Shown here: piece after piece, positions 480 to 63,171 of the stretch | Numbering within the stretch: position 1 is the stretch's first letter | Layout: every line of letters starts with the position of its first letter | NCBI RefSeq assembly: GCF_006345805.1 | Contig: NC_043000.1 | Span: 56,420,001 to 56,484,000 of the forward strand | Direction of reading: 5' to 3' | Length of the DNA stretch: 64,000 nucleotides | Source of the DNA: Octopus sinensis | Lineage: Eukaryota | The notes under the pieces: generated by a model | The model's input: only the letters and a program-made list of their open reading frames with translations | The model's database searches: none | What the model was told of the DNA's origin: nothing | Translations under genes and position numbers: made by a program

Positions 480-560
480 TATATATTCATATACACACAC
501 ATACAAACATACATATATGTGTAGTATGCATGTATGTATATATATATATATTATATATAT

Positions 561-651
<91 letters not shown>

Positions 652-809
652 ATGTATACATACATACACATATATGTATAATATATACACACAAACTTAT
701 ACCTATATAATTTTTGAATAAAGGTGCATAAAGTATTTGATTGTATTCATATATAAAATGACATATGTATATATCTATATATGCATAACTGTACTGAGAT
801 ATATATGTA

Positions 810-860
<51 letters not shown>

Positions 861-1006
861 ATATATATATGTAATATATGTATATATATACACACACAAA
901 TATATCATATGTACATATATATCATCTATATACATATATTTATATATATGTATGTATGTATACATATATATATATACACACATATATATATATATATATA
1001 TGTATA

Positions 1007-1037
<31 letters not shown>

Positions 1038-1270
1038 TGCATATATATATATATATACACACACACATACATGCGCACATATACATACATATGAGTGAGT
1101 ATGTGTGTGTGTGTGTGTGTATGTATACATACATACACATATATGTATAATATATACACACAAACTTATACCTATATAATTTTTGAATAAAGGTGCATAA
1201 AGTATTTGATTGTATTCATATATAAAATGACATATGTATATATCTATATATGCATAACTGTACTGAGATA

Positions 1271-1351
<81 letters not shown>

Positions 1352-1805
1352 TATATATATATACACACACAAATATATCATATGTACATATATATCATCT
1401 ATATACATATATTTATATATATGTATGTATGTATACATATATATATATACACACATATATATATATATATATATATGTATATATTATATATACATATATA
1501 CACACACATATGCATATATATATATATACACACACACATACATGCGCACATATACATACATATGAGTGAGTGTGTGTGTGTGTGTGTGTGTGGAAACATG
1601 ACTGTTCCCTATTTACACACACAAGCATACACACATGAGTATATATATATATGTGTGTGTGTGTTTTGTTGGATTCTTTCATTTTTGACATTTTTATCTT
1701 TTTATCACATCAGAAAATATTGCTTCCAGTTTCAAAATCAGACATCTAACCAACATCTGAAAGCAAATAAATGTGATCTCCTACACACAGACATATATAT
1801 ATATA

Positions 1806-4244: not shown

Positions 4245-5927
4245 TCTTACAACAGCAGAAGCCCTAGCATTATTGGAAGAGCTGAGCAACAGAGGCGATG
4301 TTCACATGGGTCTTCCTCACAATATATATTTCTTTACTACCCACAAGGGGCTAAACATAGAGGGGACAAACAAATGGATTAAGTCGATTACATCGACCCC
4401 AGTGCGAAACTGGTACTTTATTTATCGACCCCGAAAGAATGAAAGGCAAAGTTGACCTTGGCGGAATTTTAACTCAGAATATAGAACTTTCCAATGGCGA
4501 TAGTGATGCTTCAGATGATGAGGCTCTAGTTTCCTCAGTTTGACTGAAAAGAGGGCTTTTGGAAACTGGTGCACAAATTTCTTGTCAACAGGATAAACCT
4601 AAAGACATTGAGGAAGTTGCAGGACATTTAAAACAAATTAAATTCAGTAAAACAAGAAACTGGAAGAAAAACAAAGCGGTGAATCATGTTTGAACTTCAT
4701 GTGAGCCTGTAGATACATCTGAGGAAGCAAAATCTTGCTCAAATCCAGTAGATTTCTTTAGTTTGCTCTTCACAGATGAATTACTGGATGACATTGTAGA
4801 ACAAACAAACTGAAATGCTGTTCAAAAAGGTAAAGTTCTGAGTGTATGCAAATCGTAGCTGTATGTATTCTTTGGTGGACTGCATTCAAACTCAGACTTC
4901 TACTTGACCACTTACAAAAAAAAAATTCAAGGAACATGGTGGCTTAAGAGAACATCTCTCTGTTGATGAAAGTATGATTCCATATTATGGCAAGTACCAT
5001 ACCAAACAATTTATAAAAGGGAAACTAATTTGGTTTGGTTTCAAAGTTCGGGTCCTTTGTTCTCAGCATGGATATATGCATGCTTTTGACTTCTATACTA
5101 GAAGAAAGACAGTCCTAACTAAACCGAAAATGCATTTGGCCTTGGTGGGAACATTGCCTTGATCTCATTGATGCTGTAGGAGTACCAGACAATAAAGGTT
5201 TCAAACTATTTTTTGATAACTATTTCACACGTATTCAATTGATGCCGAAACTTTTTGAGAAAGAAATATGTGCATCAGGAACCTGCAGAGAAAATAGGAC
5301 AGCTAGATATCCTTTCAAAACGAAAACTGAAATGAATGCATGCCCCAGAGGAACAGCTGAGTTCAAGTCTACTTCAAATATAGTCGCTGTGAAATGGAAA
5401 GATAATGATGTTGTTCTGCTATCAAACTTTGAAACCTATAAAATGTCCATTGTTAAATGCTATGATAGGCCTCAAAAGAAATATGTTCTAATTCCACAGC
5501 CTGAAAGCATCCAAAATTACAACAAATATATGGGATTTGTTGACCTTCTGGATCATAACATCGCTTCCTATAGGATTCAAATGCTGCAAAATAAACGGTG
5601 GTGGCCTATTTTATCATATTTTGTATCTGTAGCAATCCAAAACACATGCATCTTGATGAATAGAGCAAAGTACAAAATTACATTATACAATTTATCGAAA
5701 ACATTTCTCTAACTCTATTCAAAATGTATGGCACTCCAAAGTTTCAAAGAAAATGCACATCTGCTCATTTGAAAGACAATGCAGGATATGATGGTGTTGA
5801 GCATTGGATTGAATATATTCCAAATCAAAGGAGATGCAAAGAGTGCTCTGGGAAAAGTCATTTCATACGTGAAAAATGTTATGTAGGAGTTCTTCGCAAA
5901 TGGTTCAAGAAGTACCATGTTCAGTAA
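4245..5927 (+). pseudogene. piggyBac (DDE_Tnp_1_7/PGBD2-3-like) transposase pseudogene with stops, frameshifts and an internal deletion
   Basis: Motifs LTTAEALALLEE, NGDSDASDDE, PVDFFSLLFTDELLDDIVEQTN, VDESMIPYYGK..KQFIKGK..FGFK, FFDNYFT, GTCRENR, KWKDN, YNKYMGFVDLLD and a C-terminal RRCKEC cysteine-rich domain. Confidence 0.88.
4327..4480 (-). mobile_element. SINE family B, 5'-truncated, inserted into the piggyBac transposase N-terminus
   Basis: TATTTCTTTACTACCCACAAGGGGCTAAAC...GAAAGGCAAAGTTGACCTTGGCGGAATTTTAACTCAGAAT interrupts GLPH|ELSNGDSD. Confidence 0.85.
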
Positions 5928-11684: not shown

Positions 11685-12234
11685 GCACACATAATTGTAC
11701 ATTACTTGAAGAATATTTGAAAGACAGCGAATTTTTGACTTTTATTTATTTCTATATAGTTGCATGGTTACTTATAATACACGAAACAAACTTTTCAAAA
11801 GTAATAGGTCATTTTTCTATAGAATATAATTTTCTAAGTTATACATTTGACCTATAAAAGTTAAAGGTCAAACAATGGTTTTAAACTATACAGAGGACTT
11901 TGTAGAATGCTACAATTATTATTTTTTCATTTTTAAAAAATTTTGTGTGAGTATTTGTCCTTTTATAGGTTGTGGGTGGTGAGCAAGGTATTGAGATAAG
12001 AATTATACATATTCCAAATTTGGAAAAATACAATACAGATCATAATTATTTAGGTATTAATAGCAGAACCACAGGATGATGCTAATTTAATATATTAAAG
12101 TGGGAGACATATTCAAATGCTATTTTCGGAGCAGATGGTCACTCTATGCTAAATCTAATCTTTAGTAATTTCTAAATTGTAAGGATTCATCTCTAGTTGG
12201 CACCTACCACTAGTTTTCAATTAAAGTAAGAAAA

Positions 12235-12730
12235 TAGGTGCAGGCATAGCTATATGGTTAAGTAGCTTGCTTTGCAACCATGTGGTTTTGGGTTCAGACC
12301 CATTGCACATCACCTTGGGTAAGTATGTTCAACTACAGCCTCAGGTGAACCAATGCTTATGAGTGAATTTGATAGATGGAAACTGTGGAAGCATGTCTCA
12401 GTGGTTAGAGCATTGGGCTCACAATTATGAGGTAGTGATTTCAATTCCCAGACAGGCTGTGTGCTGTGTTCTTGAGCAAGACACTTCATCTCATGTTGCT
12501 CCTGTTCACTCAGCTGTAGAAATGAGTTGTGATGTCACTGGTGCTAAGCTGTATTGGACTTTGCTTTTCCCTTAGATAACATCAGTGGTATGGGAAGGAG
12601 AGACTGGTATGTATGAACAACTACTGGTCTTCTATAAACAACCTTGTCCAGACTTATGCCTCAGAGGGGAACCTTCTTGATGCAATCCCATGGTCATTCA
12701 TGACCAAATGGGGTCTTTACCTTTTTTATA
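12235..12730 (+). mobile_element. Adjacent diverged tRNA-SINE heads/bodies (family A head followed by a family C-like copy)
   Basis: GGTGCAGGCATAGCTATATGGTTAAGTAGCTTGC...GGGTTCAG, then CTCAGTGGTTAGAGCATTGGGCTC...TTCAATTCCCAGAC, with A/B-box-like motifs. Confidence 0.6.
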
Positions 12731-17161: not shown

Positions 17162-18641
17162 GTAGTCTTATTTTTATAGTGTGCTTTCACTTCACTACCG
17201 AGCGCAGCTCTGTGTGCCTTGGGTATGTGCTGTGATTTGTTGTGATGCTCTGATGGTTACTGTATTGAAAGTGTTTTGCGTAGGATGTGTGCAGTGCCTA
17301 GTAGTGCAATTTTCTGGATGTTATGTGTAAGTCCTGGTGTTTTTGTTATGTATTTGTCTGAATATTTTTTATCATGCCTAATGCATGATACTGTGATAGG
17401 AATTGTTTCTGTTTTTAGATTCCACATTCTAGTTACCTCTATTTCCAGGTCTTTGTATTTTGAAAGTTTCTCCATTTCTTTTAGAGACACGTTGTCATCT
17501 GCTGGTATTGATACATAAATTAAAAAACATTTTTTTTCTTCATGATCTCTGACAACTATATCTGGTCTGTTGGCCTTAATTTCTCTATCTGTGTGTATTG
17601 GCATATCCCAGAGCATGGTTGCTTTCTCGTTTTCTGTGACCTTTTCTGGTGTGTGCCTATACCATCTTTTTTCTGTTGTTATTCCATAATGTTGGCATAG
17701 CTTCCAGTGTATGTAGGTCCCAACTCTGTCATGTCTGTGAATATATTCCTTCTTAGCCAGGACTGAGCAGCCAGAGATTATATGATTTATTGTTTCTTGT
17801 CCATCTCCACATATTCTGCAGTTGTTATATTTCTTTTCATAATATGTTTTTGGTAATTTCTGGTGGGGAGGCTTTGGTCTTGTGCTGCAATTAAAAATCC
17901 CTCTGTCTCCGCTTTGAGTCCTGAGCTACTCAACCATTGCTGGGATTTTTCTTCGTCTATTTCTTTTGCATTTAGTTTAGTCCAGTATTTGCCATGAAGA
18001 GGCTTTTCTTGCCATCGTTGTATCATGGTCCGTTGCTGTTCTAGTTTTAGTTTGGATTTCATTTGTTTTATAGCTTTTGTTTCTTCTTCTTCTTCTTCTT
18101 CTTCTTCTTCTTCTTCTTCTTCTTCTTCTTCTTCTTCATATTTGTTAGGTGGTATGATTTCTTGCTTGTATTTGTCAGCTTCCTTAAATATTGAGAACGG
18201 TTTTTTGTTTTGCTCGTGTTTTGCCGCTATTTGTATTAGTTTTCCTTCCTTCTGAAGTAGAAATTTTTGCACTCCTATGGTGGTTATTTTATAATAGTCT
18301 TCCAGCAGTATAAGGCCTCTACCACCTTCTATACGTTGTATATTTAGCCTTTCTGTCAGATTTTGGGTGATGCATCCTAGATCCTGTCATTATTTTTCTT
18401 GTTTTCCTATCTATTTTGGTTAGTTCATTTAGTGTCCAGTTAAGGATATAGTAGCTGTAACTTATAACTGGGACAGCTAAAGTGTTAATACCTATTATCT
18501 TGTTTTTAGCATTGAGCTCTGTTTTTAGTATTGATCTAACTCGTCTATAGTATTCTTTCTTTATTTTCTCTTTCATTTGTGTGTGTTGTGTCTTATCTAG
18601 TTCATGGATTCCTAAATATTTGTAAGTTTGGCTTTGGTCTA

Positions 18642-18644
<3 letters not shown>
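17161..18644 (-). mobile_element. 5'-truncated R4-clade (Dong-like) non-LTR retrotransposon inserted in a (TAA)n microsatellite
   Basis: RT end YKYLG...KEKIKKEYYRRVRSILKTELNAKNK...HHPKSD, a zinc-knuckle region, and an RLE domain LWD..IHTDREIKANRPDIVV..LIYVSIP..KEMEKLSKY with the catalytic D changed to Y. (TTA)n lies on both sides. Confidence 0.9.
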
Positions 18645-18685
<41 letters not shown>

Positions 18686-23793: not shown

Positions 23794-23826
<33 letters not shown>

Positions 23827-23985
23827 GATATAAATATAAAATAAATATAAGAGAGTGGTCACTATATTGCTCACTCTAGCACCAGTTAATCCAAAAGGTT
23901 TCAACCACGAAAATACATGTTTCCCATGAAAGCCAGTACGACTGTTAGCTCACACGGACAGGGCAAGTAAAAAATAACAAAAATA

Positions 23986-24081
23986 CAGATTATTTTGGGA
24001 CAATTGTTTCGCTATTAATGAATTAAATGTAATATTACTTACAAAAAAATCCATTTGTAGCTCGTCAGCCAAGACTATCTG
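23986..24081 (-). ncRNA. Type I hammerhead ribozyme (inverted copy)
   Basis: Reverse complement of the 24206-24300 motif, differing only by one extra U in the loop II U-run. Confidence 0.85.
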
Positions 24082-24205
24082 GATGAAATCCACTCAATCA
24101 CTCGCCAGATTTTACCATAACGATAAATACGCGTGGTTCAAATTGAACCACACGCGTATTTATCGTTATGGTAAAATCTGGCGATGTGATTGAGTGGATT
24201 TCATC

Positions 24206-24300
24206 CAGATAGTCTTGGCTGACGAGCTACAAATGGATTTTTTGTAAGTAATATTACATTTAATTCATTAATAGCGAAACAATTGTCCCAAAATAATCTG
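24206..24300 (+). ncRNA. Type I hammerhead ribozyme, predicted cleavage after GUC at 24287
   Basis: Stem I CAGAUAGUCUUGG/CCAAAAUAAUCUG (11 of 13 paired), core CUGACGA, stem II GCUA/UAGC with a 42-nt loop, GAAA, palindromic stem III ACAAUUGU, C17. Confidence 0.88.
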
Positions 24301-24720
24301 ATTTTTGTTATTTTTACTTGCCCTGTCCGTGTGAGCTAACAGTCGTACTGGCTTCATGGAAACATGTATTCGTGGTTGAAACCTTTGGATTAACTGGTGC
24401 TAGAGTGAGCAATATAGTGACCACTCTCTTATATTTATTTCGTAAAAATATTATAATAGTTATAAAATTATAATAATCCAGGTTTCTCGTAGCACTAGGC
24501 CACTTGGTGTTGAAAATATATATTAAATTAGTATCTAATTCTCTCACCTTATTAATTAATTATAATATGCTGCATTTATTTCTAAATGTGTATTTGTTTT
24601 CCGTGAAAGTTTGGCGCGCTGTTGGTTGGGGCATTTGATTATAACGTCGGATGTAATCAATTGAACCACCGCGTATTTATCGTTATGGTAAAATCTGGGT
24701 GTGATTGAGTGGATTTCATC

Positions 24721-24814
24721 CAGATAGTCTTGGCTGACGAGCTACAAATGGATTTTTTTGTAAGTAATATTACATTTAATTCATTAATAGCGAAACAATT
24801 GTCCCAATAATCTG
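24721..24814 (+). ncRNA. Type I hammerhead ribozyme (second tandem copy), predicted cleavage after 24803
   Basis: Same core and stems as 24206-24300. Two A's are missing in the 3' strand of stem I. Confidence 0.82.
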
Positions 24815-25098
24815 TATTTTGTTTTTTTTACTGCCCTGTCCGTGTGAGCTAACAGTCGTACTGGCTTTCATGGGAAACATGTATTTTCGTGTTGAAACTT
24901 TTGGATTAACTGGTGCTAGAGTGAGCAATATGTGACCACTCTCTTATATTTATTTTGTAAAAATATTATATATGTTATAAAATATTATAATATCCAGGTT
25001 TCTCGTAGCACTAGGCCACTTGGTGTGAATAAATATACTATTAAATTAGTATCTAATTCTCTCACCCTTATTAATTAATTATAGATATATATATATAT

Positions 25099-29471: not shown

Positions 29472-30704
29472 TCAGATCATTAAAAATGAAATGTCCAATT
29501 TGCTTATGCACCAAGTTTGTCAGTCATTAACTCTAATGCTAATTCTTTGTTTTACAACATTGAAGCATTACGTCATCACTTTTTGAAATGCAATTCATGG
29601 TGTCTGATTATATTGTGAGTTTTCTTTTGTAAATCAATTTTTGTGAACCCATAGAAAGATCAGAAATTCGTGTTGCTTATGAATATGAGTTCCATCATGG
29701 AACCAATGAATCTCAGACAGCTTGAAACATCAATGTGGTGTTTGGTAAATTAGTGCACTGTACATCGATGGTTTGAGAAGTTCCAGTCTGGTGAATTTAC
29801 TCTTGAGAATCAGCCCCATGGTAGACCTAAGACCAAGGTAGATAATGATAAGCTGGAAACTGTAGTGGAAGTGAATACATCTCAAACTACATGTGAGTAA
29901 GCATTGAGGTTTGATGTTTCGATTCCAATTATATTGAACCATCTGAAACAAATCAGCAAGGTAAAGAAGCTGGACAAATGGGTACCACATGAACTGAACA
30001 AGCATCAAACGACACCTCATCTTGAAACTTGCTGTTCTTTGTTGACACGGCATAAAAGCAAACCATTTTTGCATTGTATTGTTGAGTGATGAAAAATGGA
30101 TTCTTTTCAACAATAACAAGCATTCTACACAGTGGTTGGATAGAGACGAGGTGCCAAAACACAATCCAAAAAGGAATATTTACCAAAAATAGTGCTGGTG
30201 TCATTTACAACAGCTTTGTGAGACTTGGTAAGTCAATTACAGCAGATGTTTACATAAACTAGTTGGATGAAACGATGAGTGAACTTGCAATTAAACAACC
30301 AAGATTGGTCAATACAGACAGGCCAATTCTCTTGCAAGACAATGCTTGACCACATGTTGCACAAAGAATGCTACTCAAGTTACAGGAACTGAACTTGGAA
30401 GTACTCTGTCATCTACCATATTCACCAGACCTTGCACCAACTGATTACCATGTTTTCCAAGCATTAGACATTTTGGAAGGAAAAAAATTTGAATCTGAAG
30501 AAGATGCAAAAACAACCTTTCGTGATTTCAACACCTCTCGCTCTCCAGAATTCTTCGCTGCTGGCATAAATAAGCTACTGTTAAAATGGCAAAACTGTGT
30601 TGATAATCTAGGTGCAAACTTTGATTAACTGCATTGCTTTTTGTTGAGATAAAGTAAAATAAACTTTCAGTTCAAAATCAGACATTTCATTCTTAATGAC
30701 CTGA
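29472..30704 (+). mobile_element. mariner element (cecropia/Hsmar1-like), full-length and decayed
   Basis: TA TSDs and ~30-bp TIRs TCAGATCATTAAAAATGAAATGTCCAATTT / AAATCAGACATTTCATTCTTAATGACCTGA. Confidence 0.92.
29651..30628 (+). pseudogene. mariner DD34D transposase pseudogene
   Basis: Motifs WVPHEL, DEKWI, LLQDNA*PH, HLPYSPDLAPTDYHVFQAL and KWQNCVD...G..FD. Multiple stops and frameshifts. Confidence 0.9.
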
Positions 30705-33726: not shown

Positions 33727-35584
33727 AACATACAAGAATAAATCTAGCTTCATTAGTCTCACTGTGTTGAGATGAACAACACCAATGAACGACACCAATG
33801 TTGAATACAAAGAGACAGTAACTGACATATTCCAACCAAGTCCACTTTCCCCGTCTCTGTTATAATCACCACTGGAATCAGATGCAGAAAAACAGAATGA
33901 ATTTCATACAATCCTTCACTGCATGTCAGTATAAGAATTGTGGTTCTCAGATAGGAAAAAGCAAGGTATATGCAGAGCATTAAATATGTGGATCATGCCA
34001 AGGTGTTCGACCAACTATTTGCATGCATACATGCCATGCCACAGGCCTTTTTAATCAGAGGTGACCTGGGTATTAGACAACAATAGCAACCAGAATGAAA
34101 GCAAATTATTAGCAGTTATTCTTTTCCTTCACCACCACCACCAGAACTGTCATCATCATCATCAATGAATTGTTATACTATGTACAACTGTGTAATCATG
34201 TACGGTAGTTCCAGTTGCCAGTATTCCAAACACAAAGAGGTTGATGTGAGGAAAGAAGGAAGAAATTGCAGTTGGTTCAGGGTCAAATGAAAGCAGAAAT
34301 ATTACTCTTAGAAGTTCTAGTAAGAAGAAATCCTCCCACAGCCTTACAAGCGACAGGTTAACCTATGGAAGACTACATATTTGTCAAGTAGTCCTTTTTT
34401 GTCTTTTTGTTTTTATATTGATCTTTCAGTAGGTGGAAACAATCAAATATGGTTAAGCTCAGCACAAAGACGTGCCACACATGACCTGTTATATTAGGAA
34501 AAGGATAGGGAAGAAAATTCTAAAAATAAGAGGCAAAGGGAGAGATCTATGTCCACAGACAACCAGTAACAGATCTATTATTAGAGATTTAGAATTCAAG
34601 GGCCAAAAGATAATATATAAATTAGCAGGCAGACATACACACAACATGGATAGCTGGGTGGATGAACAGCCAGAGAGAAAGACAGACAGAGAGGTAAAGA
34701 GATGATTTATTTGTTAAGATATACTACAAAACTATAAAAGCTTACAGTAAGAGGTTCTTGATTAAGAAAGCAACATCATATATATTTTAGTAATTTATTT
34801 ATCTTCAAAATGGTATATTAAAGATAATGCTCAATGGTTGTATACAGACACAGGGTTGTTGAAGTTAGCCAGACAATCACAAAAGAAAGCTAATGTTTTT
34901 AAATTTAGCTGTCTTCCAGAACATTTCTCTTTTAGAAGAAATAAAGAATGGACAGCGAAAAACTAGATGATGTTTATTCTATGAAATATATTATCTTTTA
35001 TCTGTTTTATTTATTAGATTGTGGCCTTGCTGAAGTACAGTCTTGAAAGATTTAATCAAACAAATTTACCCTTGCTACTTTATTCTATTGCTCTTTACTG
35101 CTGAACCACTAAGTTACAGGGATGTAAGCAAGTCAACAGCAGTTGTCCAGTAGTTGGTGGGGCAAACACAAACTCAGACACACATACATATATAGATATA
35201 CATACATATATAGATTACACAATAAGCTTCCACAGTTTCATCTACCAAATTCAATCACAAAGCATCGGTCAGCTTGAGGCTGTACTAGAAGACACTTTGT
35301 TCAGGTGCCACACAATGGGACTGAACCCAAAACCACATGGTTGCAAAACGTGCTTCATAACCACACAGTCATGTCTACACCTATGACATGATAAAAAATT
35401 GTTAACAAATATAGGCGCAGGAGTGGCTGTGTTGTAAGTAGCTTGCTTACCAACCACATGGTTCCGAGTTCAGTCCCACTACATGGCACCTTGGGCAAGT
35501 GTCTTCTACTATAGCCTCAGGTTGATCAAAGCCTTGTGAGTGGATTTGGTAGACGGAAACTGAAAGAAGCCCGTTGTATACATG

Positions 35585-35626
<42 letters not shown>

Positions 35627-35832
35627 GTGAAATAGAAAGATGAATAATCTTGTAGTAGATTAATCAAAAGTTTAACCGATACCTTAGTAGCAAAAATCAC
35701 AGCAGTAAACAGCACGGTTGGAGGTACAACCATATGGTGTTGCAACCGTGCGTTGGTGCGGATAATTGAAATTAAAACATTATTGGTGAATTGAAGAAAT
35801 GGAGCTGAACGCAGATTGAACAGAAATCGTTT

Positions 35833-35926
35833 TATTTCATTCTACACGTGTTTCGAAAGGCACAAATTACCAAAATCCGATTGAATAATGGGACCATATT
35901 GTGTCTTTCTCTTCAGGAAGAAAATA
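35833..35926 (-). ncRNA. Type I hammerhead ribozyme
   Basis: Exact reverse complement of 36020-36113. Confidence 0.85.
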
Positions 35927-36019
35927 GGAAATCCGTTGGAAACACAAAAACAGAACAGAGGCGGAGCAATTTGTTTTTGCTCCGCCTCTGTTCTGTTTTT
36001 GTTTTTCCAACGGATTTCC

Positions 36020-36113
36020 TATTTTCTTCCTGAAGAGAAAGACACAATATGGTCCCATTATTCAATCGGATTTTGGTAATTTGTGCCTTTCGAAACACGT
36101 GTAGAATGAAATA
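36020..36113 (+). ncRNA. Type I hammerhead ribozyme, predicted cleavage after GUA at 36103
   Basis: Stem I UAUUUUCUUC/GAAUGAAAUA, core CUGAAGA, stem II GAAAGACACAA/UUGUGCCUUUC, GAAA, palindromic stem III ACACGUGU, A17. Confidence 0.87.
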
Positions 36114-36169
36114 AAACGATTTCTGTTCAATCTGCGTTCAGCTCCATTTCTTCAATTCACCAATAATGT

Positions 36170-36234
<65 letters not shown>

Positions 36235-37160
36235 ATGTTTGTATGTCTGTGTTTGTCCCCTAGCATTGCTTGACAACCAATGTTGGTGTGTTTATGTCCC
36301 CGTCACTTAGCGGTTAGGCAAAAGAGACTGATAGAATAAGTACTGGGCTTACAAAGAATAAGTCCCGGTGTCGAGTTGCTTGACTAAAGGCGGTGCTCCA
36401 GCATGGCCGCAGTCAACTGACTGAAACAAGTAAAAGAGTAAAAGAGTAAGAGTAAATAAATGATACTCCAGTATCTGTATAAGATGTGGTGTATTATAAA
36501 ACATGCCACCAAGTTGTAGCAATGGGAGACAACTCTGTTTCATAGAAGCTGTGTATCTTTATTGAGCATTACAATTCTTTTAAACACATACAAACAATTT
36601 GAGCAAATATGTTTACAAATGAATATCTCAGAAGGCCTACAAATAGCTATAAGCTAGTTTAAAAGTCCCTAATCATATTGATTTGCAGTCTGGCACCTTA
36701 ACCTGACAACTACTGAATGACAAGGATGTCCCATTGAAGATTAAAATGAGATTTATAGCCGGTTATTCTCAGGGGAGGAAATTACAGAAGTTTTGGAAAC
36801 TAATTGGCAAAGGAATATAAGAGTTACGGAAGATGATCAATGTGATACAGGGTCGAAATGAAATTAATATCAACAGCATAAACAATTTGGTTTGGTGCCA
36901 GAACATGACACAACAAACGTTGCTTTTCTGATATGAAAACTGCAGAGAAAATGTCTGATGTAAAATTCTGATGCAAGAAGAATTAGTCAAACAACTTTTG
37001 CTGAGTTTGTCTGCAGATACAACAGTTCAATCAATATGCACATATACATACACAAGGCAATGCACACAAGCAAACAGACAGACACACACATACACACACA
37101 CATATATATACATACACACACATACATTATATATATATATATATACATACACACACATAC

Positions 37161-39371: not shown

Positions 39372-39408
<37 letters not shown>

Positions 39409-39570
39409 GTAAAATATGAAAAATCAATGAAAATGCACATTGCAAATAAAAAAAGGCTTTTTATGACAGGTAACGATAAATATATACATTTAGATGGACT
39501 GAGGTAGTAATAAGAGTCATAAAAGTCATTATTATGAGATGATTATAAGATGATAATAAAGTAAGAGAAC

Positions 39571-39611
39571 AAAGCGAACCATGGTTTCGGCAAAAAGCTA
39601 TTCATCGCTTT
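39571..39611 (-). ncRNA. Variant hammerhead-like motif in the Penelope 3' region
   Basis: RNA AAAGCG AUGAAUA GC UUUUU GCC GAAA CCAUGG UU CGCUUU has a 6-bp stem I and palindromic stem III ACCAUGGU. The core is non-canonical (A3/U8). Confidence 0.55.
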
Positions 39612-39781
39612 GAAAACACCGGCTAATACACGGTGTCAGGTCTAATAGTTCCTGAGAAAAAAGATTATTTGTAAGGGAGGTAAGTAGTTCTGGATTATTT
39701 GTAAGGGAGTTAAGTAGTTCTGGATTTAGAGATGTGAGTGGTGTAAGAAGTGTATAGGGGTTAGTGGTTTCAATTGAAGAG

Positions 39782-40075
39782 TTAGTGGTGTTCTGTATTG
39801 AGTTGTGTGTTCATATTTAGTTGGGGGAGATATTTATTGATGAAAAATGCCTCTTTATTCAACCTTTGTTGAATTGTGGTGTTCTGTGAACATTGATAAA
39901 AGGGAAAGATTTGGAAATTGGGAGTAAGATTCCTGGCACACCTTTCTATGTGTTCACTCACCTTTAACTGTCTGTATTGAGGGTGGCGGATTTGCTCTTT
40001 GTGAATGGTGGTTCTTTGACAGAGAGAAATTCCTGTTTGTCCAATATAGCGTTTACCACATCCTATGCATGTCAT
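39782..40075 (-). pseudogene. Penelope-like GIY-YIG endonuclease C-terminal fragment
   Basis: CIGCGKRYIGQTGISLCQRTTIH...VSEHIERC...FQIFP...RLNKEAFFINKYLPQLN fits the PLE GIY-YIG pattern C..C...YIGQT..L..R..H..H..E..FI...P.LN. Confidence 0.88.
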
Positions 40076-40726
40076 GACAAATTTGATTTGATCTTAAATT
40101 TATTTGCAATGTGCATTTTTGTTGATTTTTCATATTTTACCCTTCCATTTCCACGTGTATTTTATATTTTCTTTTTGTAACATATTTCTACTATATATAT
40201 ATATATATATAGTTCTGAAGGAGATTCAGCATGGCACCCAGAATGTAGCAATGCTGGCCCTTTGAATTACAGGTACAACTTACTTTTGCCAGCTGAGTGG
40301 ACTGTAACAATGTGAAATAAAGTGTCATGCTTAAGGACACAATGTGCTACCAGGAATTGAACTCATGACATTATGATCATGAGCTGAATAGACCTAACCA
40401 CTAAGCCACACACCTTTACAATAGTAAATAGGAGAGTGATGGAGGGATAAGCATTAAGATGATAAGGAGTGGAGTTAAAGGCTACATGTGGGAGGAGAGT
40501 GAGAGACAAGTATATGCAAGGGTGATGATGGTTGATATTATGTATGAGGAATGCATGTCAACACTGGATCATGGTGGCAGACCAGAAGCTTGGGTGAGGA
40601 GACAAGAAGAAGAAGCATCAGTTGTAGATTTGGCAGGGGCACAGTTGTGCACATACACATTATGCGTTGAGAGCATACTGTATCGTATCACCAATCATTA
40701 TGGTCCTTTGTCACTCCTTTCATGAG

Positions 40727-43599: not shown

Positions 43600-44260
<661 letters not shown>

Positions 44261-49677: not shown

Positions 49678-50061
49678 CTGTGGCTGTGTGGTAAATAGAC
49701 TGCTTACCAACAACACGGTTCCAGGTTCTCATCCCACTGCATGGCACCTTTCTACTAAAGCCTCAGGCCAACCAAAAGCCTGTGAGTGGATTTGGTAGAT
49801 GGAAATTGAAAGTAGCCTGTCGTGTGTCTGTCTGTCTGTCTGTCTGTCTGTGCCTGTGTGTGTTTGTGTCTATGTTTGTCACCGAATAATCAGTTGACAA
49901 CTGCTGTTGGTCTGTTTACATCCCCATAACTTAGCAGTTTGGCTAAAGAGACTGATAGAATAAGTACTAGGATTACAAAGAATAAGTCCTGGGGTTGATT
50001 TGTTTTACTGAAGGCAGTGCTCCAGTATGGCTGCAGGCAAATGACTGAAACAAACAAAAGA

Positions 50062-50062
<1 letters not shown>
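49678..50062 (+). mobile_element. SINE family A, diverged
   Basis: Collinear with the family A copies at 35414 and 62682. Confidence 0.8.
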
Positions 50063-50115
<53 letters not shown>

Positions 50116-55667: not shown

Positions 55668-56245
55668 TTATCTTTTACTTGTTCCAGTCACTAGACTGGA
55701 GCACCACCTAGAAGAACTTTTAGTCAAATGTATCGACCTCAGTACTAATTTTTCTTTTCTCTCTTAAGCCTGGCACTTATTCTATCAGTCTCTTTTACTG
55801 AGCCAGGGATGTAAACACAGCATCACTCATTGTCAAGTGGTACATGGGAAGGGGAAGATACAGACACACACACACAAGGGGGTGCTGGAAAATTCCTGGT
55901 TTTGGGTAAAAAAAAATACAGGAGGATCAATTAGTTATTGATTTGATTCAACATAATCCCTTCTCAGATTCACACACTTATTGTAGTGGTCCTTCATTTT
56001 TCTAAACCCTGTCAAAGAACTCAGAAGGTTCGGCCTCCAACTAGGCCTTTCGAGATACCCTTAAAGCAGCAACCCCTTGTATATACAATGAGCTTCTTTC
56101 AGTTTCTGTATGCCAAATCCACACACAAAGCTTTGGTCAGCCTGAGGCTAGAGTAGAAGACACTTGTTCAAGGTGTCATATAGTGGGACTGAACCCAGAA
56201 CCATGTGGTTGGTAAGCAAACTTCTTACCATATAGCCAAACCTGC
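55668..56245 (-). mobile_element. SINE family A carrying a mariner-type MITE (55875-56080) in its central microsatellite
   Basis: SINE tail and head flank a segment homologous to 33540-33726, with ACAAGGGGGTGCTG / CAGCAACCCCTTGT ends. Confidence 0.75.
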
Positions 56246-56650
56246 TTTATATATTTTTTAAATAAATCCACAAACCAAGATGTGATTCTGAAATTTTGGA
56301 AATATATTGTGCAGCAGATTTTCAGTAATTATACCCTAAATCAAATTAGACATCTTATCCAGCATGTTATCTGTAAAATGTTTATTTACTTGAATTAACA
56401 GTAGCTTTAGCATATACTCATGAAATAAAGTGGAAGTAATAATTAATTTCTTTTTAAATTAATAAACAATTATGAGAAATCCTTTGATTGGTAATGACAA
56501 AATAGATGCAATAGGCTTGTAAATGTACTTTAAAGATTAACTCCATCATATACTGAATAAAAAATTGGAAAAATTTCCAATTTAAAATTGTTCAAGGACT
56601 TTAAATTGATGCTGAATATTTCTACTCCCATGTTGATGATTATGTTACCA

Positions 56651-62681: not shown

Positions 62682-63090
62682 TACTCTTTTACTCGTTTAC
62701 TTGTTTCAGTCATTTGACTGTGGCCATGCTGGAGCACCGCCTTTAATCGAGCAACTCGACCCCGGGACTTATTCTTTTGTAATCCCAGTACATATTCTAT
62801 CGGTCTCTTTTGCCGAACCGCTAAGTAACGGGAACATAAACACACCAGCATCGGTTGTCAAGCAATGCGAGGGGGGAAAAACACAGACACACAAACACAC
62901 ACACGCATATATATATATACATATATATGACAGGCTTCTTTCAGTTTCCGTCTACCAAATCCACTCACAAGGCTTTGGTCAGCCCGAGGCTATAGTAAAA
63001 GACACTTGCCCAAGGTGCCATGCAGTGGGACTGAACCCGGAACCATGTAGTTGGTAAGCAAGCTACTTACCACACAGCCACTCCTGCGCC
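62682..63090 (-). mobile_element. SINE family A, full-length and young
   Basis: CpGs retained. tRNA-like head, central (AT/AC)n and (GAGTAAAA)n tail. Confidence 0.92.
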
Positions 63091-63171
63091 TATATATATA
63101 CTCATATATATATATACATACACGCATATACACATACACACACACACACACATATATACACATATACACGC

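What the first reader, a model, noticed from the sequence alone, without database searches (positions are those of the whole stretch)
35625..36170. Second, unrelated hammerhead family as a near-perfect 395-bp hairpin nested in a SINE
The 194-bp arms (one mismatch) each carry a canonical type I HHR (CUGAAGA, 11-bp stem II with one mismatch and a 33-nt loop, ACACGUGU stem III, GUA site). A further 150 bp extends the minus-strand copy. The element is inserted in the central (AT)n of a family A SINE, so it is younger than that SINE. A transcript through either strand would contain one sense and one antisense ribozyme and could fold into long dsRNA, a potential ADAR substrate in an animal group with extensive A-to-I editing (inference).
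Basis: partly seen in the sequence, partly recalled or inferred. Interest (0 to 1): 0.85.

Follow-up and report, generated by a model that had tools for sequence, protein, structure and literature searches.

The report
Hammerhead-bearing retroelement inserted head-to-head
The near-perfect 395-bp hairpin with a hammerhead ribozyme motif in each arm is real. It is most likely the usual head-to-head insertion scar of a Penelope-like/retrozyme retroelement that landed in a SINE's (TA)n repeat, so it is a good example of a known kind rather than a new system.

Summary
Arms 35776-35969 and 35977-36170 (194 nt) differ by one mismatch and are separated by a 7-nt spacer. The left copy runs 148 nt further, to 35625. 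The insert sits in the (TA)n core of a SINE whose paralogues lack it. Each arm carries a complete type I hammerhead core (CUGAAGA, GAAA, GUA; cleavage after A36103 on + and after 35843 on -).

This motif class is expected 0.02 times per shuffled window and is found 4 times. Rfam Hammerhead_1 aligns end to end but scores only 14.8 bits (threshold 34).

Helix III is the 8-nt palindrome ACACGUGU. That is the metazoan design that works only as a dimer of two sense copies, and this locus cannot supply a second sense copy.

A second hammerhead family (23848-25084) and a 5'-truncated Penelope-like element with a GIY-YIG endonuclease remnant (39407-40192) share the same architecture: (TA)n on both sides, copies head to head with 3' ends outward, and unequal 3' ends.

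The best explanation is therefore target-primed reverse transcription from both strands by Penelope-like machinery. This rests on architecture and literature, not on homology. The dsRNA fold is supported; ADAR editing is untested. No other copies could be found, but the collections searched do not hold the host genome.

Verdict: new member of a known kind, modest interest.

The parts
35408..35582 (+). Left (tRNA-derived head) half of the host SINE copy
   Evidence: Aligns at 93.6% to 62924-63095 (-) and to other copies.
35583..35624 (.). Left part of the SINE's central microsatellite ((TA)n); target DNA at the left junction
   Evidence: Sequence. Perfect (TA) run 35589-35624. Uninterrupted in SINE paralogues.
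35625..35772 (-). 3' extension of the longer, minus-sense copy (148 nt), with no counterpart in the right arm. Contains a stem-loop GCACGGUUG...CAACCGUGC (35712-35751) around the palindrome AACCAUAUGGUU.
   Evidence: Unique in the window. The stem-loop is seen in the folds. The sequence was read directly.
35776..35969 (-). Left arm: the 5' part of the minus-sense copy. Sense runs from the centre outward.
   Evidence: One mismatch to the right arm, at 35943/36003.
35833..35926 (-). Hammerhead type I motif, minus-strand copy. CUGAAGA at 35916-35910. Predicted cleavage after 35843, giving a new 5' end at 35842.
   Evidence: Descriptor scan. Identical in sequence to the plus-strand copy.
35970..35976 (.). 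7-nt non-palindromic spacer TTTGTTT at the centre: the junction of the two 5'-truncated copies
35977..36170 (+). Right arm: the shorter plus-sense copy. Its 3' end (...CACCAAUAAUGUU) abuts (TA)n.
36020..36113 (+). Hammerhead type I motif, plus-strand copy. Stem I 36020-36029 / 36104-36113; CUGAAGA 36030-36036; stem II 36037-36047 / 36081-36091 with a 33-nt loop; GAA 36092-36094; palindromic helix III ACACGUGU 36095-36102; A17 at 36103; cleavage 36103|36104.
   Evidence: Descriptor scan. Rfam RF00163 full-length alignment at 14.8 bits. Folding and cofolding.
36171..36232 (.). Right part of the SINE microsatellite: (TA)n 36171-36188, then (TG)n
36233..36452 (+). Right half of the host SINE copy
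   Evidence: 90.7% identical to 62682-62897 (-).
23848..25084 (.). Context: the other hammerhead family, with the same architecture. Inverted partial copy 23848-24140 (-), about 1.8 tandem direct units of 516 bp at 24145-25084 (+), (TA)-rich microsatellite on both sides. Hammerheads (CUGACGA, helix III ACAAUUGU, GUC) at 24219-24287 (+), 24734-24803 (+) and 24068-23999 (-).
   Evidence: Rfam RF00163 27.5 bits, E 2.9e-5.
39407..40192 (-). Context: a 5'-truncated Penelope-like element between two (TA)n runs. [quoted passage not shown]
   Evidence: HMMER found 748 relatives, best E 2.5e-29, always matching at their C-terminus. Full-length relatives carry RVT_1 plus GIY-YIG.

Best explanation
The 546-bp insert is a dead-on-arrival integration product of a hammerhead-bearing, non-coding retroelement RNA. 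That RNA is a non-autonomous derivative, or pLTR fragment, of a Penelope-like element (PLE), i.e. a 'non-LTR retrozyme'-type sequence. It was copied into the (TA)n core of a SINE by PLE-type target-primed reverse transcription.

Inferred mechanism:
1. The GIY-YIG endonuclease cut both strands of the AT-rich microsatellite.
2. Each exposed 3'-OH primed cDNA synthesis at a different internal site of the template RNA. One site is at ...CACAU. The other is 148 nt further upstream, at ...AAUGUU.
3. Both cDNAs ran toward the RNA's 5' side. They were joined head to head at the same template position, either by template switching between the two cDNAs or by snap-back of one of them. This left a 7-nt junction.

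The result is two sense copies pointing outward from the centre: a 194-bp perfect inverted repeat plus a one-sided 148-nt 3' extension.

The hammerhead is cargo of the source element. Its 8-nt palindromic helix III (ACACGUGU) means it is built to cleave as a dimer formed by two sense copies in a multimeric transcript. At this locus any transcript has one sense and one antisense copy and collapses into a duplex of about 194 bp. The ribozyme is therefore predicted to be inactive here, and the only likely activity of the locus is as a source of long dsRNA if it is transcribed.

Shown: the structure, the motif, the target, the nesting, and parallel architectures in the same window, one of them with PLE coding sequence. 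Inferred: the enzyme responsible, the two-strand priming, the joining step, and the dimer requirement.
For: 1. The structure is as described.
2. The complete hammerhead core and three helices occur twice. This motif class is expected 0.02 times per shuffled window, and 4 hits are observed, from two sequence-unrelated families. The Rfam type I model aligns over its full length in the same register.
3. Two copies are predicted to pair through an intermolecular 8-bp ACACGUGU helix: -44.9 kcal/mol against 2 x -16.3. The literature states that metazoan type I hammerheads have a short helix III with a palindromic loop and act as dimers (PMC4209133, PMC7229834).
4. Three independent elements in this one window share the architecture: family 2 (35625-36170), family 1 (23848-25084) and a PLE fragment (39407-40192). 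Each has (TA)n or TA-rich repeat on both sides, copies head to head with sense 3' ends outward, and unequal 3' ends differing by about 148, 125 and 50 nt. Sense is defined independently by the ORF in the PLE fragment and by the ribozyme in the two hammerhead families, and the two definitions agree.
5. [quoted passage not shown] Its full-length relatives are RT plus GIY-YIG proteins of about 750 aa, the PLE hallmark.
6. Perfect (TA)>=6 runs cover only 2.87% of the window, yet five of the six junctions abut one and the sixth (family 1, left) lies in TA-rich repeat about 20 nt from one.
7. These features are published as typical of PLEs: 5' truncation, partial tandems, an adjacent inverted 5'-truncated copy, a one-sided tail and microsatellite (TA)n bias (PMC8557442). 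A purified PLE protein cleaves and extends both DNA strands, prefers AT-rich DNA and starts reverse transcription at two internal RNA sites (PMC11167929). Hammerheads on opposite strands 100-700 bp apart were noted in PLE-rich genomes (PMC4209133). Animal retrozymes are related to PLE pLTRs (bioRxiv 10.64898/2026.07.22.740005).
8. The only long non-microsatellite inverted repeats in the window are the two hammerhead elements.
9. GC content is 36.4%, within the <45% described for non-LTR retrozymes (PMC7229834).
Against: - No second copy of this family was found anywhere. Its unit length, its tandem form and any homology to a PLE pLTR are therefore unknown.
- The insert shares no detectable sequence with the PLE fragment in the window.
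- The 148-nt asymmetry is much longer than the 30-40-bp 'tail' described for PLEs.
- Helix II (11 bp plus a 33-nt loop) is longer than in described PLE mini-hammerheads (7-8 bp) or canonical ones (4 bp).
- The Rfam score is far below threshold (14.8 against 34 bits).
- My relaxed scan found no hammerhead core in two fetched full-length PLE relatives, which come from other, unknown organisms.
- No target-site duplication can be read inside a microsatellite.
- Ribozyme activity and the joining mechanism are untested.
Confidence: 0.7

Rival explanations
1. The hammerhead-bearing unit is a retrozyme or satellite monomer mobilised by some other machinery. Candidates are a microsatellite-targeting LINE with twin priming, or DNA-level repair or template switching at a fragile (AT)n hairpin. 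The similarity to PLE insertions would then be coincidental.
For: There is no sequence link between the insert and any PLE. LINE-like fragments are present in the window (17260-18684). From general knowledge, (AT)n tracts are prone to breakage and palindrome formation, and L1 twin priming produces 5' inversions. The 148-nt asymmetry is unlike the 30-40-bp PLE tail (PMC8557442).
Against: From general knowledge, twin priming yields inverted non-overlapping segments, not two copies of the same segment. A coding PLE remnant shows the same geometry 3.2 kb away. Hammerheads with a palindromic helix III are a documented PLE/retrozyme feature (PMC4209133). A PLE protein is the only retrotransposon protein reported in those papers to extend both strands (PMC11167929).
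Confidence: 0.13
2. The palindrome is an assembly or library artefact, for example a long-read chimera, an unrecognised hairpin adapter, or an amplification snap-back. The true locus would hold a single copy.
For: From general knowledge, near-perfect palindromes with a short spacer are a classic artefact. Craig et al. note that complex PLE insertions cause assembly problems (PMC8557442). Copies of family 1 differ mostly by 1-nt homopolymer indels, which suggests a noisy long-read assembly.
Against: The palindrome is internal, and both halves of the same SINE flank it in the correct order and orientation. The arms carry one substitution and are asymmetric by 148 nt. Two other elements with different geometries show the same head-to-head arrangement. 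No other long palindromes occur in 64 kb.
Confidence: 0.07
3. It is a foldback or MITE-like DNA transposon with long inverted repeats that inserts at TA. The hammerhead motif would be incidental cargo or a chance match.
For: Long inverted repeats and a TA-rich target.
Against: The inverted repeats are not terminal. The left end (ATGTGAAATAG...) is unrelated to the reverse complement of the right end (AACATTATTGG...), and 148 nt are unpaired. Family 1 combines an inverted copy with direct tandem units, which a cut-and-paste element does not produce. The motif is expected only 0.02 times per shuffled window.
Confidence: 0.05
4. The hairpin is a selected RNA gene, such as a hairpin-RNA/endo-siRNA or miRNA-like precursor, or a dedicated ADAR substrate, rather than a by-product.
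For: Extremely stable fold. Sub-threshold matches to long plant miRNA hairpin models.
Against: All Rfam matches are far below gathering scores and match both strands equally, so they reflect generic hairpin similarity. The locus is a young insertion inside a SINE, with no conservation data. The same architecture arises in a coding PLE fragment.
Confidence: 0.03

Closest known systems
Penelope-like element (PLE) insertions with pseudo-LTRs and hammerhead motifs (Penelope/Poseidon, Neptune, Nematis, Hydra clades)
   Same: A type I hammerhead with a minimal or palindromic helix III. A 5'-truncated copy with an adjacent inverted copy forming an inverted repeat. Unequal ends. Insertion into AT-rich or (TA)n DNA (PMC8557442, PMC4209133, PMC11167929). 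A coding PLE remnant with the same geometry lies in the window.
   Different: The insert has no ORF and no detectable similarity to the PLE remnant. The one-sided extension is 148 nt rather than 30-40 bp. Helix II is 11 bp with a 33-nt loop. The arms are almost the whole element, which gives a near-perfect hairpin.
Metazoan non-LTR retrozymes (tandem 150-450-bp repeats with type I hammerheads expressed as circRNAs; coral, mussel, axolotl)
   Same: A non-coding, low-GC (36%) unit of at least 345 nt carrying a type I hammerhead of the dimeric design (PMC7229834). Family 1 in the same window is a tandem array of this kind.
   Different: At this locus there is no tandem repeat, only less than one unit plus an inverted partial copy. 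Circular RNA and expression are untested. The unit RNA has no unusually stable fold (z = -1.2).
Rfam RF00163 Hammerhead_1 (type I; Schistosoma, newt and cricket satellite ribozymes)
   Same: The same core, the same topology and the same zero-loop palindromic helix III as in the model consensus. The alignment is full length.
   Different: 14.8 bits against a gathering score of 34. There is a 51-nt insertion in stem-loop II and a mismatch in stem I. The loop-loop tertiary contacts are not recognisable.
L1 twin priming (5' inversion) products
   Same: Two cDNAs primed from both sides of a break, meeting in the middle (general knowledge).
   Different: Twin priming joins different segments of one RNA. 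Here both arms copy the same segment.

Membership tests
Hammerhead ribozyme, type I (Rfam RF00163) | Conserved core C3 U4 G5 A6 N7 G8 A9 ... G12 A13 A14 ... A15.1-U16.1, with H17 at the cleavage site | tested here: met
   CUGAAGA 36030-36036, GAA 36092-36094, A36095-U36102 pair, A36103. Identical on the minus strand.
Hammerhead ribozyme, type I (Rfam RF00163) | Three helices around the core with helix I open (type I), and a G10.1-C11.1 pair | tested here: met
   Stem I has 3 + 6 bp around one mismatch. Stem II has 11 bp with one A.C mismatch and starts G-C. Stem III is 2 bp, or an 8-nt palindrome. The HHR-consistent fold is 1.5 kcal/mol above the MFE of the isolated segment.
Hammerhead ribozyme, type I (Rfam RF00163) | Score at or above Rfam's gathering threshold (34 bits) | tested here: not met
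   No hit at gathering. 14.8 bits, E 0.48, when one arm is searched alone. Family 1 scores 27.5 bits.
Hammerhead ribozyme, type I (Rfam RF00163) | Covariation in the helices across homologues | tested here: inconclusive
   No homologous copies were obtainable. The two arms are identical in the motif. The unrelated family 1 keeps all three helices with different sequences, for example ACAAUUGU against ACACGUGU. That shows shared architecture, not covariation.
Hammerhead ribozyme, type I (Rfam RF00163) | Site-specific self-cleavage | not testable with these tools
   Needs in vitro transcription of monomer and tandem-dimer constructs.
Penelope-like element insertion / non-autonomous PLE derivative | Adjacent inverted 5'-truncated copy, giving head-to-head copies with 3' ends outward | tested here: met
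   Both sense copies, defined by ribozyme polarity, run from the centre outward. The PLE remnant has the same geometry, defined there by its ORF.
Penelope-like element insertion / non-autonomous PLE derivative | Insertion bias for AT-rich DNA or (TA)n microsatellites | tested here: met
   Both junctions abut perfect (TA)n runs. Such runs cover 2.87% of the window. SINE paralogues with an empty site confirm the insertion.
Penelope-like element insertion / non-autonomous PLE derivative | One-sided 30-40-bp 'tail' reflecting two internal RT start sites | tested here: inconclusive
   A one-sided extension exists but is 148 nt long. The extensions are about 50 nt in the PLE remnant and about 125 nt in family 1.
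Penelope-like element insertion / non-autonomous PLE derivative | Sequence homology of the unit to the pLTR/UTR of an autonomous PLE of the same genome | tested here: not met
   No similarity to the only PLE fragment in the window. The genome outside the window is not available, so the test is very incomplete.
Penelope-like element insertion / non-autonomous PLE derivative | RT plus GIY-YIG ORF (autonomous members only) | tested here: not met
   The insert has only short chance ORFs. It could only be a non-autonomous member.
Metazoan non-LTR retrozyme | Tandem repeats (dimer to multimer) of a 150-450-bp unit, each with a type I hammerhead | tested here: not met
   There is one sense hammerhead per strand and no direct repeat at this locus. 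Family 1 does form 516-bp tandem units.
Metazoan non-LTR retrozyme | Low GC (<45-50%), no LTR/PBS/PPT, non-coding | tested here: met
   GC 36.4%. No ORF of note. No direct terminal repeats.
Metazoan non-LTR retrozyme | Expression as linear and circular RNA of unit length | not testable with these tools
   No transcriptome data available.
Foldback / MITE DNA transposon | Inverted repeats at the very termini of the element | tested here: not met
   The left terminus at 35625 and the right terminus at 36170 are not complementary. 148 nt are unpaired.
miRNA / hairpin-RNA gene families in Rfam | Score at or above the family's gathering threshold | tested here: not met
   Best hit is MIR8562 at 111.6 against 211 bits. 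Hits occur on both strands, so they reflect generic hairpin similarity.

The most novel reading that the evidence does not exclude
Head-to-head insertions of hammerhead-bearing Penelope-type elements may be a regular source of long, perfectly paired hairpin transcripts in this genome. Such transcripts could feed dsRNA pathways (ADAR editing or RNAi) and so influence control of the element family. In addition, the two families here, with greatly enlarged stem-loop II and an 8-nt palindromic helix III, may represent a distinct protein-assisted or dimer-only hammerhead subclass that current models (Rfam RF00163) miss.
Probability: 0.1. Interest if true: 0.55.

Novelty: new member of a known kind. 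Interest (0 to 1): 0.3.

Why it matters
The locus is a compact natural record of how Penelope-type retroelements integrate. Both DNA strands of an AT microsatellite were used as primers. Reverse transcription started at two different internal sites. The two cDNAs were then joined at a common point. These steps have so far been seen mainly in vitro for one lizard element (PMC11167929).

It also shows that sub-threshold hammerheads with long stem-loop II insertions are missed by Rfam at default settings. HHR censuses in such genomes may therefore undercount them.

If the locus is transcribed it is a ready-made 194-bp dsRNA. That would be relevant to RNA editing or silencing, but this is not shown.

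For genome annotation, the lesson is that perfect palindromes at (TA)n sites in this genome are likely transposon scars rather than new RNA genes.

Tried and rejected
1. Rfam at gathering thresholds on the whole window gave no family at all. With E-value thresholds on 35500-36300, the palindrome attracts many sub-threshold plant miRNA and other hairpin models on both strands. I rejected these as generic hairpin similarity.

2. Searches for other copies of the family all found nothing:
- blastn within the window.
- Exact-pattern scans of metagenome contigs and viral contigs.
- A protein-space search with the 72-aa stop-free translation of the unit.
As a control, a 25-mer from the host's high-copy SINE is also absent from the metagenome collection. 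The negatives therefore say nothing about copy number. No eukaryotic genome collection was available.

3. Pfam on the endonuclease-like ORF remnant gave no hit, and so did the word-indexed protein search. Only the exhaustive HMMER search recovered relatives. Pfam on the full-length relatives then showed RT plus GIY-YIG.

4. I looked for hammerhead cores in two fetched full-length PLE relatives from unknown organisms (L001, L002). My relaxed scan and Rfam both found none. A direct link between a PLE pLTR and a hammerhead of this design was therefore not obtained.

5. I tested whether the 345-nt unit folds like a viroid or retrozyme rod. It does not (z = -1.2).

6. ARAGORN finds no tRNA in the SINE heads.

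7. I considered that the 3' UTR of the PLE remnant keeps a hammerhead 3' half (GAAACCAUGGUU at 39588, minus strand). About 7 such GAAA-plus-palindrome strings occur elsewhere in the window, and no intact CUGANGA lies upstream, so I left this as a weak note.

8. The host organism could not be identified with the tools. The cephalopod inference remains untested.
Full report

Yes. The repeat finder reports one outstanding inverted repeat: arms 35773-35969 and 35977-36173, 197 nt, 99% complementary, 7 nt apart. A base-by-base check finds mismatches only at 35775/36171 and 35943/36003. The outer three bases are already part of the flanking (TA)n.

The left copy continues for another 148 nt (35625-35772) that has no partner on the right. 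As RNA the region folds at -381 kcal/mol against -119 +/- 6.5 for shuffles.

Across the whole window, the only long inverted repeats that are not microsatellite are this one and the other hammerhead element.

**2. Is the hammerhead real?**

I wrote a type I descriptor requiring:
- CUGANGA.
- A helix II of at least 4 bp starting next to the core.
- GAA.
- An A15.1...U16.1 helix III followed by H.
- A helix I that closes across the motif.

It hits 36030-36103 on the plus strand and 35916-35843 on the minus strand, plus a second family near 24 kb. In 200 dinucleotide-preserving shuffles of the window the mean number of hits is 0.02, and no shuffle gave two.

- CUGAAGA.
- An 11-bp helix II with one A.C mismatch and a 33-nt loop.
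- ACACGUGU after GAA.
- A GUA triplet, with cleavage after A36103 (new 5' end at 36104) and after 35843 on the other strand (new 5' end at 35842).

The single arm mismatch (35943/36003) lies outside the motif, so both ribozyme copies are identical.

Rfam is less generous. Nothing reaches gathering in the window, and with the palindrome present the hammerhead models do not even appear. When one arm alone is searched, Hammerhead_1 (RF00163) aligns over its whole length in the same register, but at 14.8 bits and E 0.48 against a threshold of 34. The loss comes mainly from a 51-nt insertion in stem-loop II. The other family scores 27.5 bits, E 2.9e-5.

So the motif is a complete hammerhead by core and topology, statistically unexpected, and formally sub-threshold. 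Its activity is untested.

**3. What kind of hammerhead is it?**

Helix III is ACAC/GUGU with no loop. As a hairpin it can form only 2 bp. As a duplex between two copies it forms 8 bp. Folding the isolated segment gives an MFE of -16.3 kcal/mol, with the hammerhead-consistent structure at -14.8. Cofolding two copies gives -44.9 kcal/mol with the intermolecular ACACGUGU helix.

This design is described for most metazoan type I hammerheads and for those in Penelope-like elements. They have a short helix III with a palindromic loop, poor cleavage as monomers, and cleavage as dimers when two copies sit in one transcript (PMC4209133; PMC7229834 for axolotl dimer constructs).

It follows that the palindromic locus is a bad place for this ribozyme. 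A transcript of either strand has one sense and one antisense copy, so no dimer can form in cis, and the sense copy is sequestered in a perfect duplex of about 194 bp. I therefore predict no self-cleavage from this locus. This is an inference.

**4. Is it an insertion?**

The flanks are the two halves of a tRNA-derived SINE with a central (TA)n(TG)n microsatellite. Copies at 62682-63095 (-), which are 91-94% identical to the flanks, and at 49680-50064 (+) run straight through a short microsatellite where this locus has the 546-bp insert. The insert is therefore younger than that SINE copy.

The arms differ at 1 of 194 positions. The SINE differs from its closest paralogue by 6-9%.

**5.

The descriptor's other hits belong to a second family (CUGACGA, helix III ACAAUUGU, GUC). 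Its locus at 23848-25084 has three parts:
- An inverted partial copy (23848-24140, minus).
- A palindrome centre at about 24141, lying on a natural short palindrome of the unit (TCAATTGA in the next repeat).
- About 1.8 direct tandem units of 516 bp (24145-25084), each with a hammerhead.

The whole element is bounded by (TA)-rich microsatellite.

A third element at 39407-40192 also lies between two (TA)n runs. It has 44-nt inverted termini (39407-39450 / 40099-40142, 95%) and a one-sided extension of about 50 nt (40143-40192). It contains an ORF remnant (39785-40093, minus) reading ...CIGCGKRYIGQTG...R...H...E..I...LN followed by a stop.

Pfam and the word-indexed protein search miss this ORF. 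An exhaustive HMMER search finds 748 relatives, best E 2.5e-29. They always match at their C-terminus, and the long ones are 738-773 aa. Pfam finds RVT_1 plus a C-terminal GIY-YIG domain in those relatives. That domain order defines canonical endonuclease-positive Penelope-like elements (PMC8557442, PMC4209133).

In all three elements the sense strand runs from the centre outward, so the 3' ends face the flanks. Sense is defined by the ORF in one case and by the ribozyme in the other two. In all three, the two outward 3' ends are unequal, by about 50, 125 and 148 nt. Five of the six junctions directly abut a perfect (TA)n run, and the sixth (family 1, left) lies in TA-rich repeat about 20 nt from one. 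Perfect (TA)>=6 runs make up only 2.87% of the window.

**6. Mechanism**

These features are the published signature of PLE integration (PMC8557442):
- Strong 5' truncation.
- Partial tandems forming pseudo-LTRs.
- Often an inverted 5'-truncated copy adjacent at the 5' end.
- A tail at one end only.
- Microsatellite, notably (TA)n, insertion bias that hides target-site duplications.

[quoted passage not shown] It prefers AT-rich DNA and starts reverse transcription at two internal sites of the RNA, which explains the tail. Its hammerhead is not needed for insertion in vitro (PMC11167929). Cervera and de la Pena also noted pairs of PLE-type hammerheads 100-700 bp apart on opposite strands (PMC4209133). 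Here the two cores are 114 bp apart.

I therefore read the locus as follows:
1. The endonuclease opened the (TA)n.
2. The top-strand 3'-OH at 35624 primed a cDNA from an RNA position ending ...CACAU.
3. The bottom-strand 3'-OH at 36171 primed a second cDNA from a position 148 nt further upstream (...AAUGUU, followed in the RNA by the AU-rich UUAAUUU).
4. Both cDNAs proceeded toward the RNA's 5' side.
5. They were joined at the same template position, by template switching or snap-back, leaving TTTGTTT.

The structure is shown. The enzymology is inferred from the literature and from the parallel PLE remnant.

The template was most probably a non-coding PLE derivative of the 'non-LTR retrozyme' kind. 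Animal retrozymes are reported to be related to PLE pLTRs (PMC7229834; bioRxiv 10.64898/2026.07.22.740005). Family 1 in this window actually is a tandem array of that type.

**7. What argues against this reading, and what remains unknown**

- I could not obtain a single further copy of the family. It is unique in the window. It is absent from the metagenome and viral contig collections and from the protein-space search with its longest stop-free translation.
- A control shows that the host's own high-copy SINE is also absent from the metagenome collection. These negatives reflect the databases, not the genome.
- Consequently the unit length (at least 345 nt), any tandem form, covariation in the ribozyme helices, and homology to an autonomous PLE all remain open.
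- The insert has no similarity to the PLE remnant nearby.
- The 148-nt asymmetry is longer than the classical tail.
- Helix II is unusually long.
- Two full-length PLE relatives fetched from other, unknown organisms showed no hammerhead core in my scan.
- The 345-nt unit has no unusually stable fold (z = -1.2).

**8. Rivals**

- Another retrotransposition or repair route at a fragile (AT)n tract is the main rival (0.13). It explains the palindrome but not the three-fold recurrence with a PLE coding remnant.
- An assembly artefact (0.07) is disfavoured by the correct SINE halves on both sides, the asymmetry and the arm mismatch. Only reads can exclude it.
- A foldback or MITE transposon (0.05) fails because the inverted repeats are not terminal.
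- A selected hairpin RNA gene (0.03) has no support beyond the fold.

**9. The dsRNA/ADAR idea**

The fold is certain if the locus is transcribed. Whether it is transcribed, edited or diced cannot be tested here. The one arm difference is a G/T difference in sense terms and says nothing about editing. The host organism was not identified, so the premise of 'an animal group with extensive A-to-I editing' is also untested.

**10. Verdict**

The element is a new member of a known kind: a hammerhead-bearing Penelope-type or retrozyme-type retroelement, caught as a head-to-head insertion in a SINE microsatellite. Interest is modest (0.3). It is a clean natural example of two-strand priming, and it shows that long-stem-II hammerheads escape Rfam thresholds. 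It is not a new system.

Noticed in passing
window 23848-25084: The other hammerhead family (CUGACGA, helix III ACAAUUGU, GUC) is also a head-to-head structure. It has an inverted partial copy (23848-24140), about 1.8 tandem units of 516 bp and three hammerhead copies, with (TA)-rich microsatellite on both sides. The palindrome centre lies on a short natural palindrome of the unit.
   Followed up: yes
window 39407-40192: A 5'-truncated Penelope-like element between two (TA)n runs. It has a C-terminal GIY-YIG ORF remnant (39785-40093, minus), 44-nt inverted 3' termini and a one-sided tail-like extension of about 50 nt. Pfam misses the ORF remnant. Exhaustive HMMER finds 748 relatives, and the full-length ones have RT plus GIY-YIG.
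   Followed up: yes
window 39577-39588 (minus strand): The 3' UTR of that PLE remnant contains GAAACCAUGGUU: GAA plus the 8-nt palindrome ACCAUGGU plus U, the same design as helix III of the two hammerhead families. No intact CUGANGA lies upstream, only CGAUGA. About 7 comparable strings occur elsewhere in the window, so this is only weakly suggestive of a decayed hammerhead.
   Followed up: partly
window 24141-25040 vs 23826-24144: Copies of hammerhead family 1 differ from each other almost only by single-base indels in homopolymer runs (96% identity). This looks like long-read assembly noise rather than divergence. The family 2 arms show no indels at all.
   Followed up: partly
window 5239-5712 (+): An ORF fragment matching the piggyBac-type transposase domain DDE_Tnp_1_7 (PF13843, E 9.6e-16).
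   Followed up: no
window 17260-18684 (-): A series of ORF fragments that look like the C-terminal part of a non-LTR (LINE-like) retrotransposon ORF. There is a weak zf-RVT hit (E 0.0023), interrupted by a poly-Glu/(TTC)n run.
   Followed up: no
window 43600-44259: A nearly perfect (GAC)n array of about 220 copies (97% matches). It creates long spurious ORFs in several frames.
   Followed up: no
window 35408-36452, 62682-63095, 49680-50064, 56082-56261, 12227-12385 and others: A high-copy SINE family with a tRNA-like head (A/B-box-like GGCTGTGTGGTAAG...GGTTCCGGGTTCAGTCCC) and a central microsatellite ((TA)n(TG)n in most copies). There are at least 10 partial or complete copies in 64 kb. ARAGORN calls none of the heads a tRNA. 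The central (TA)n makes the SINE itself a target for Penelope-type insertions.
   Followed up: partly
window 533-1591: A 469-bp-period tandem duplication (2.3 copies, 92%) made largely of (TA)n/(CA)n microsatellite.
   Followed up: no
window 30350-30625 (+): A stop-free stretch containing ...LPYSPDLAPTDYHVF.... From memory this resembles mariner/Tc1-type transposases. Pfam gave no hit at E<=1.
   Followed up: no
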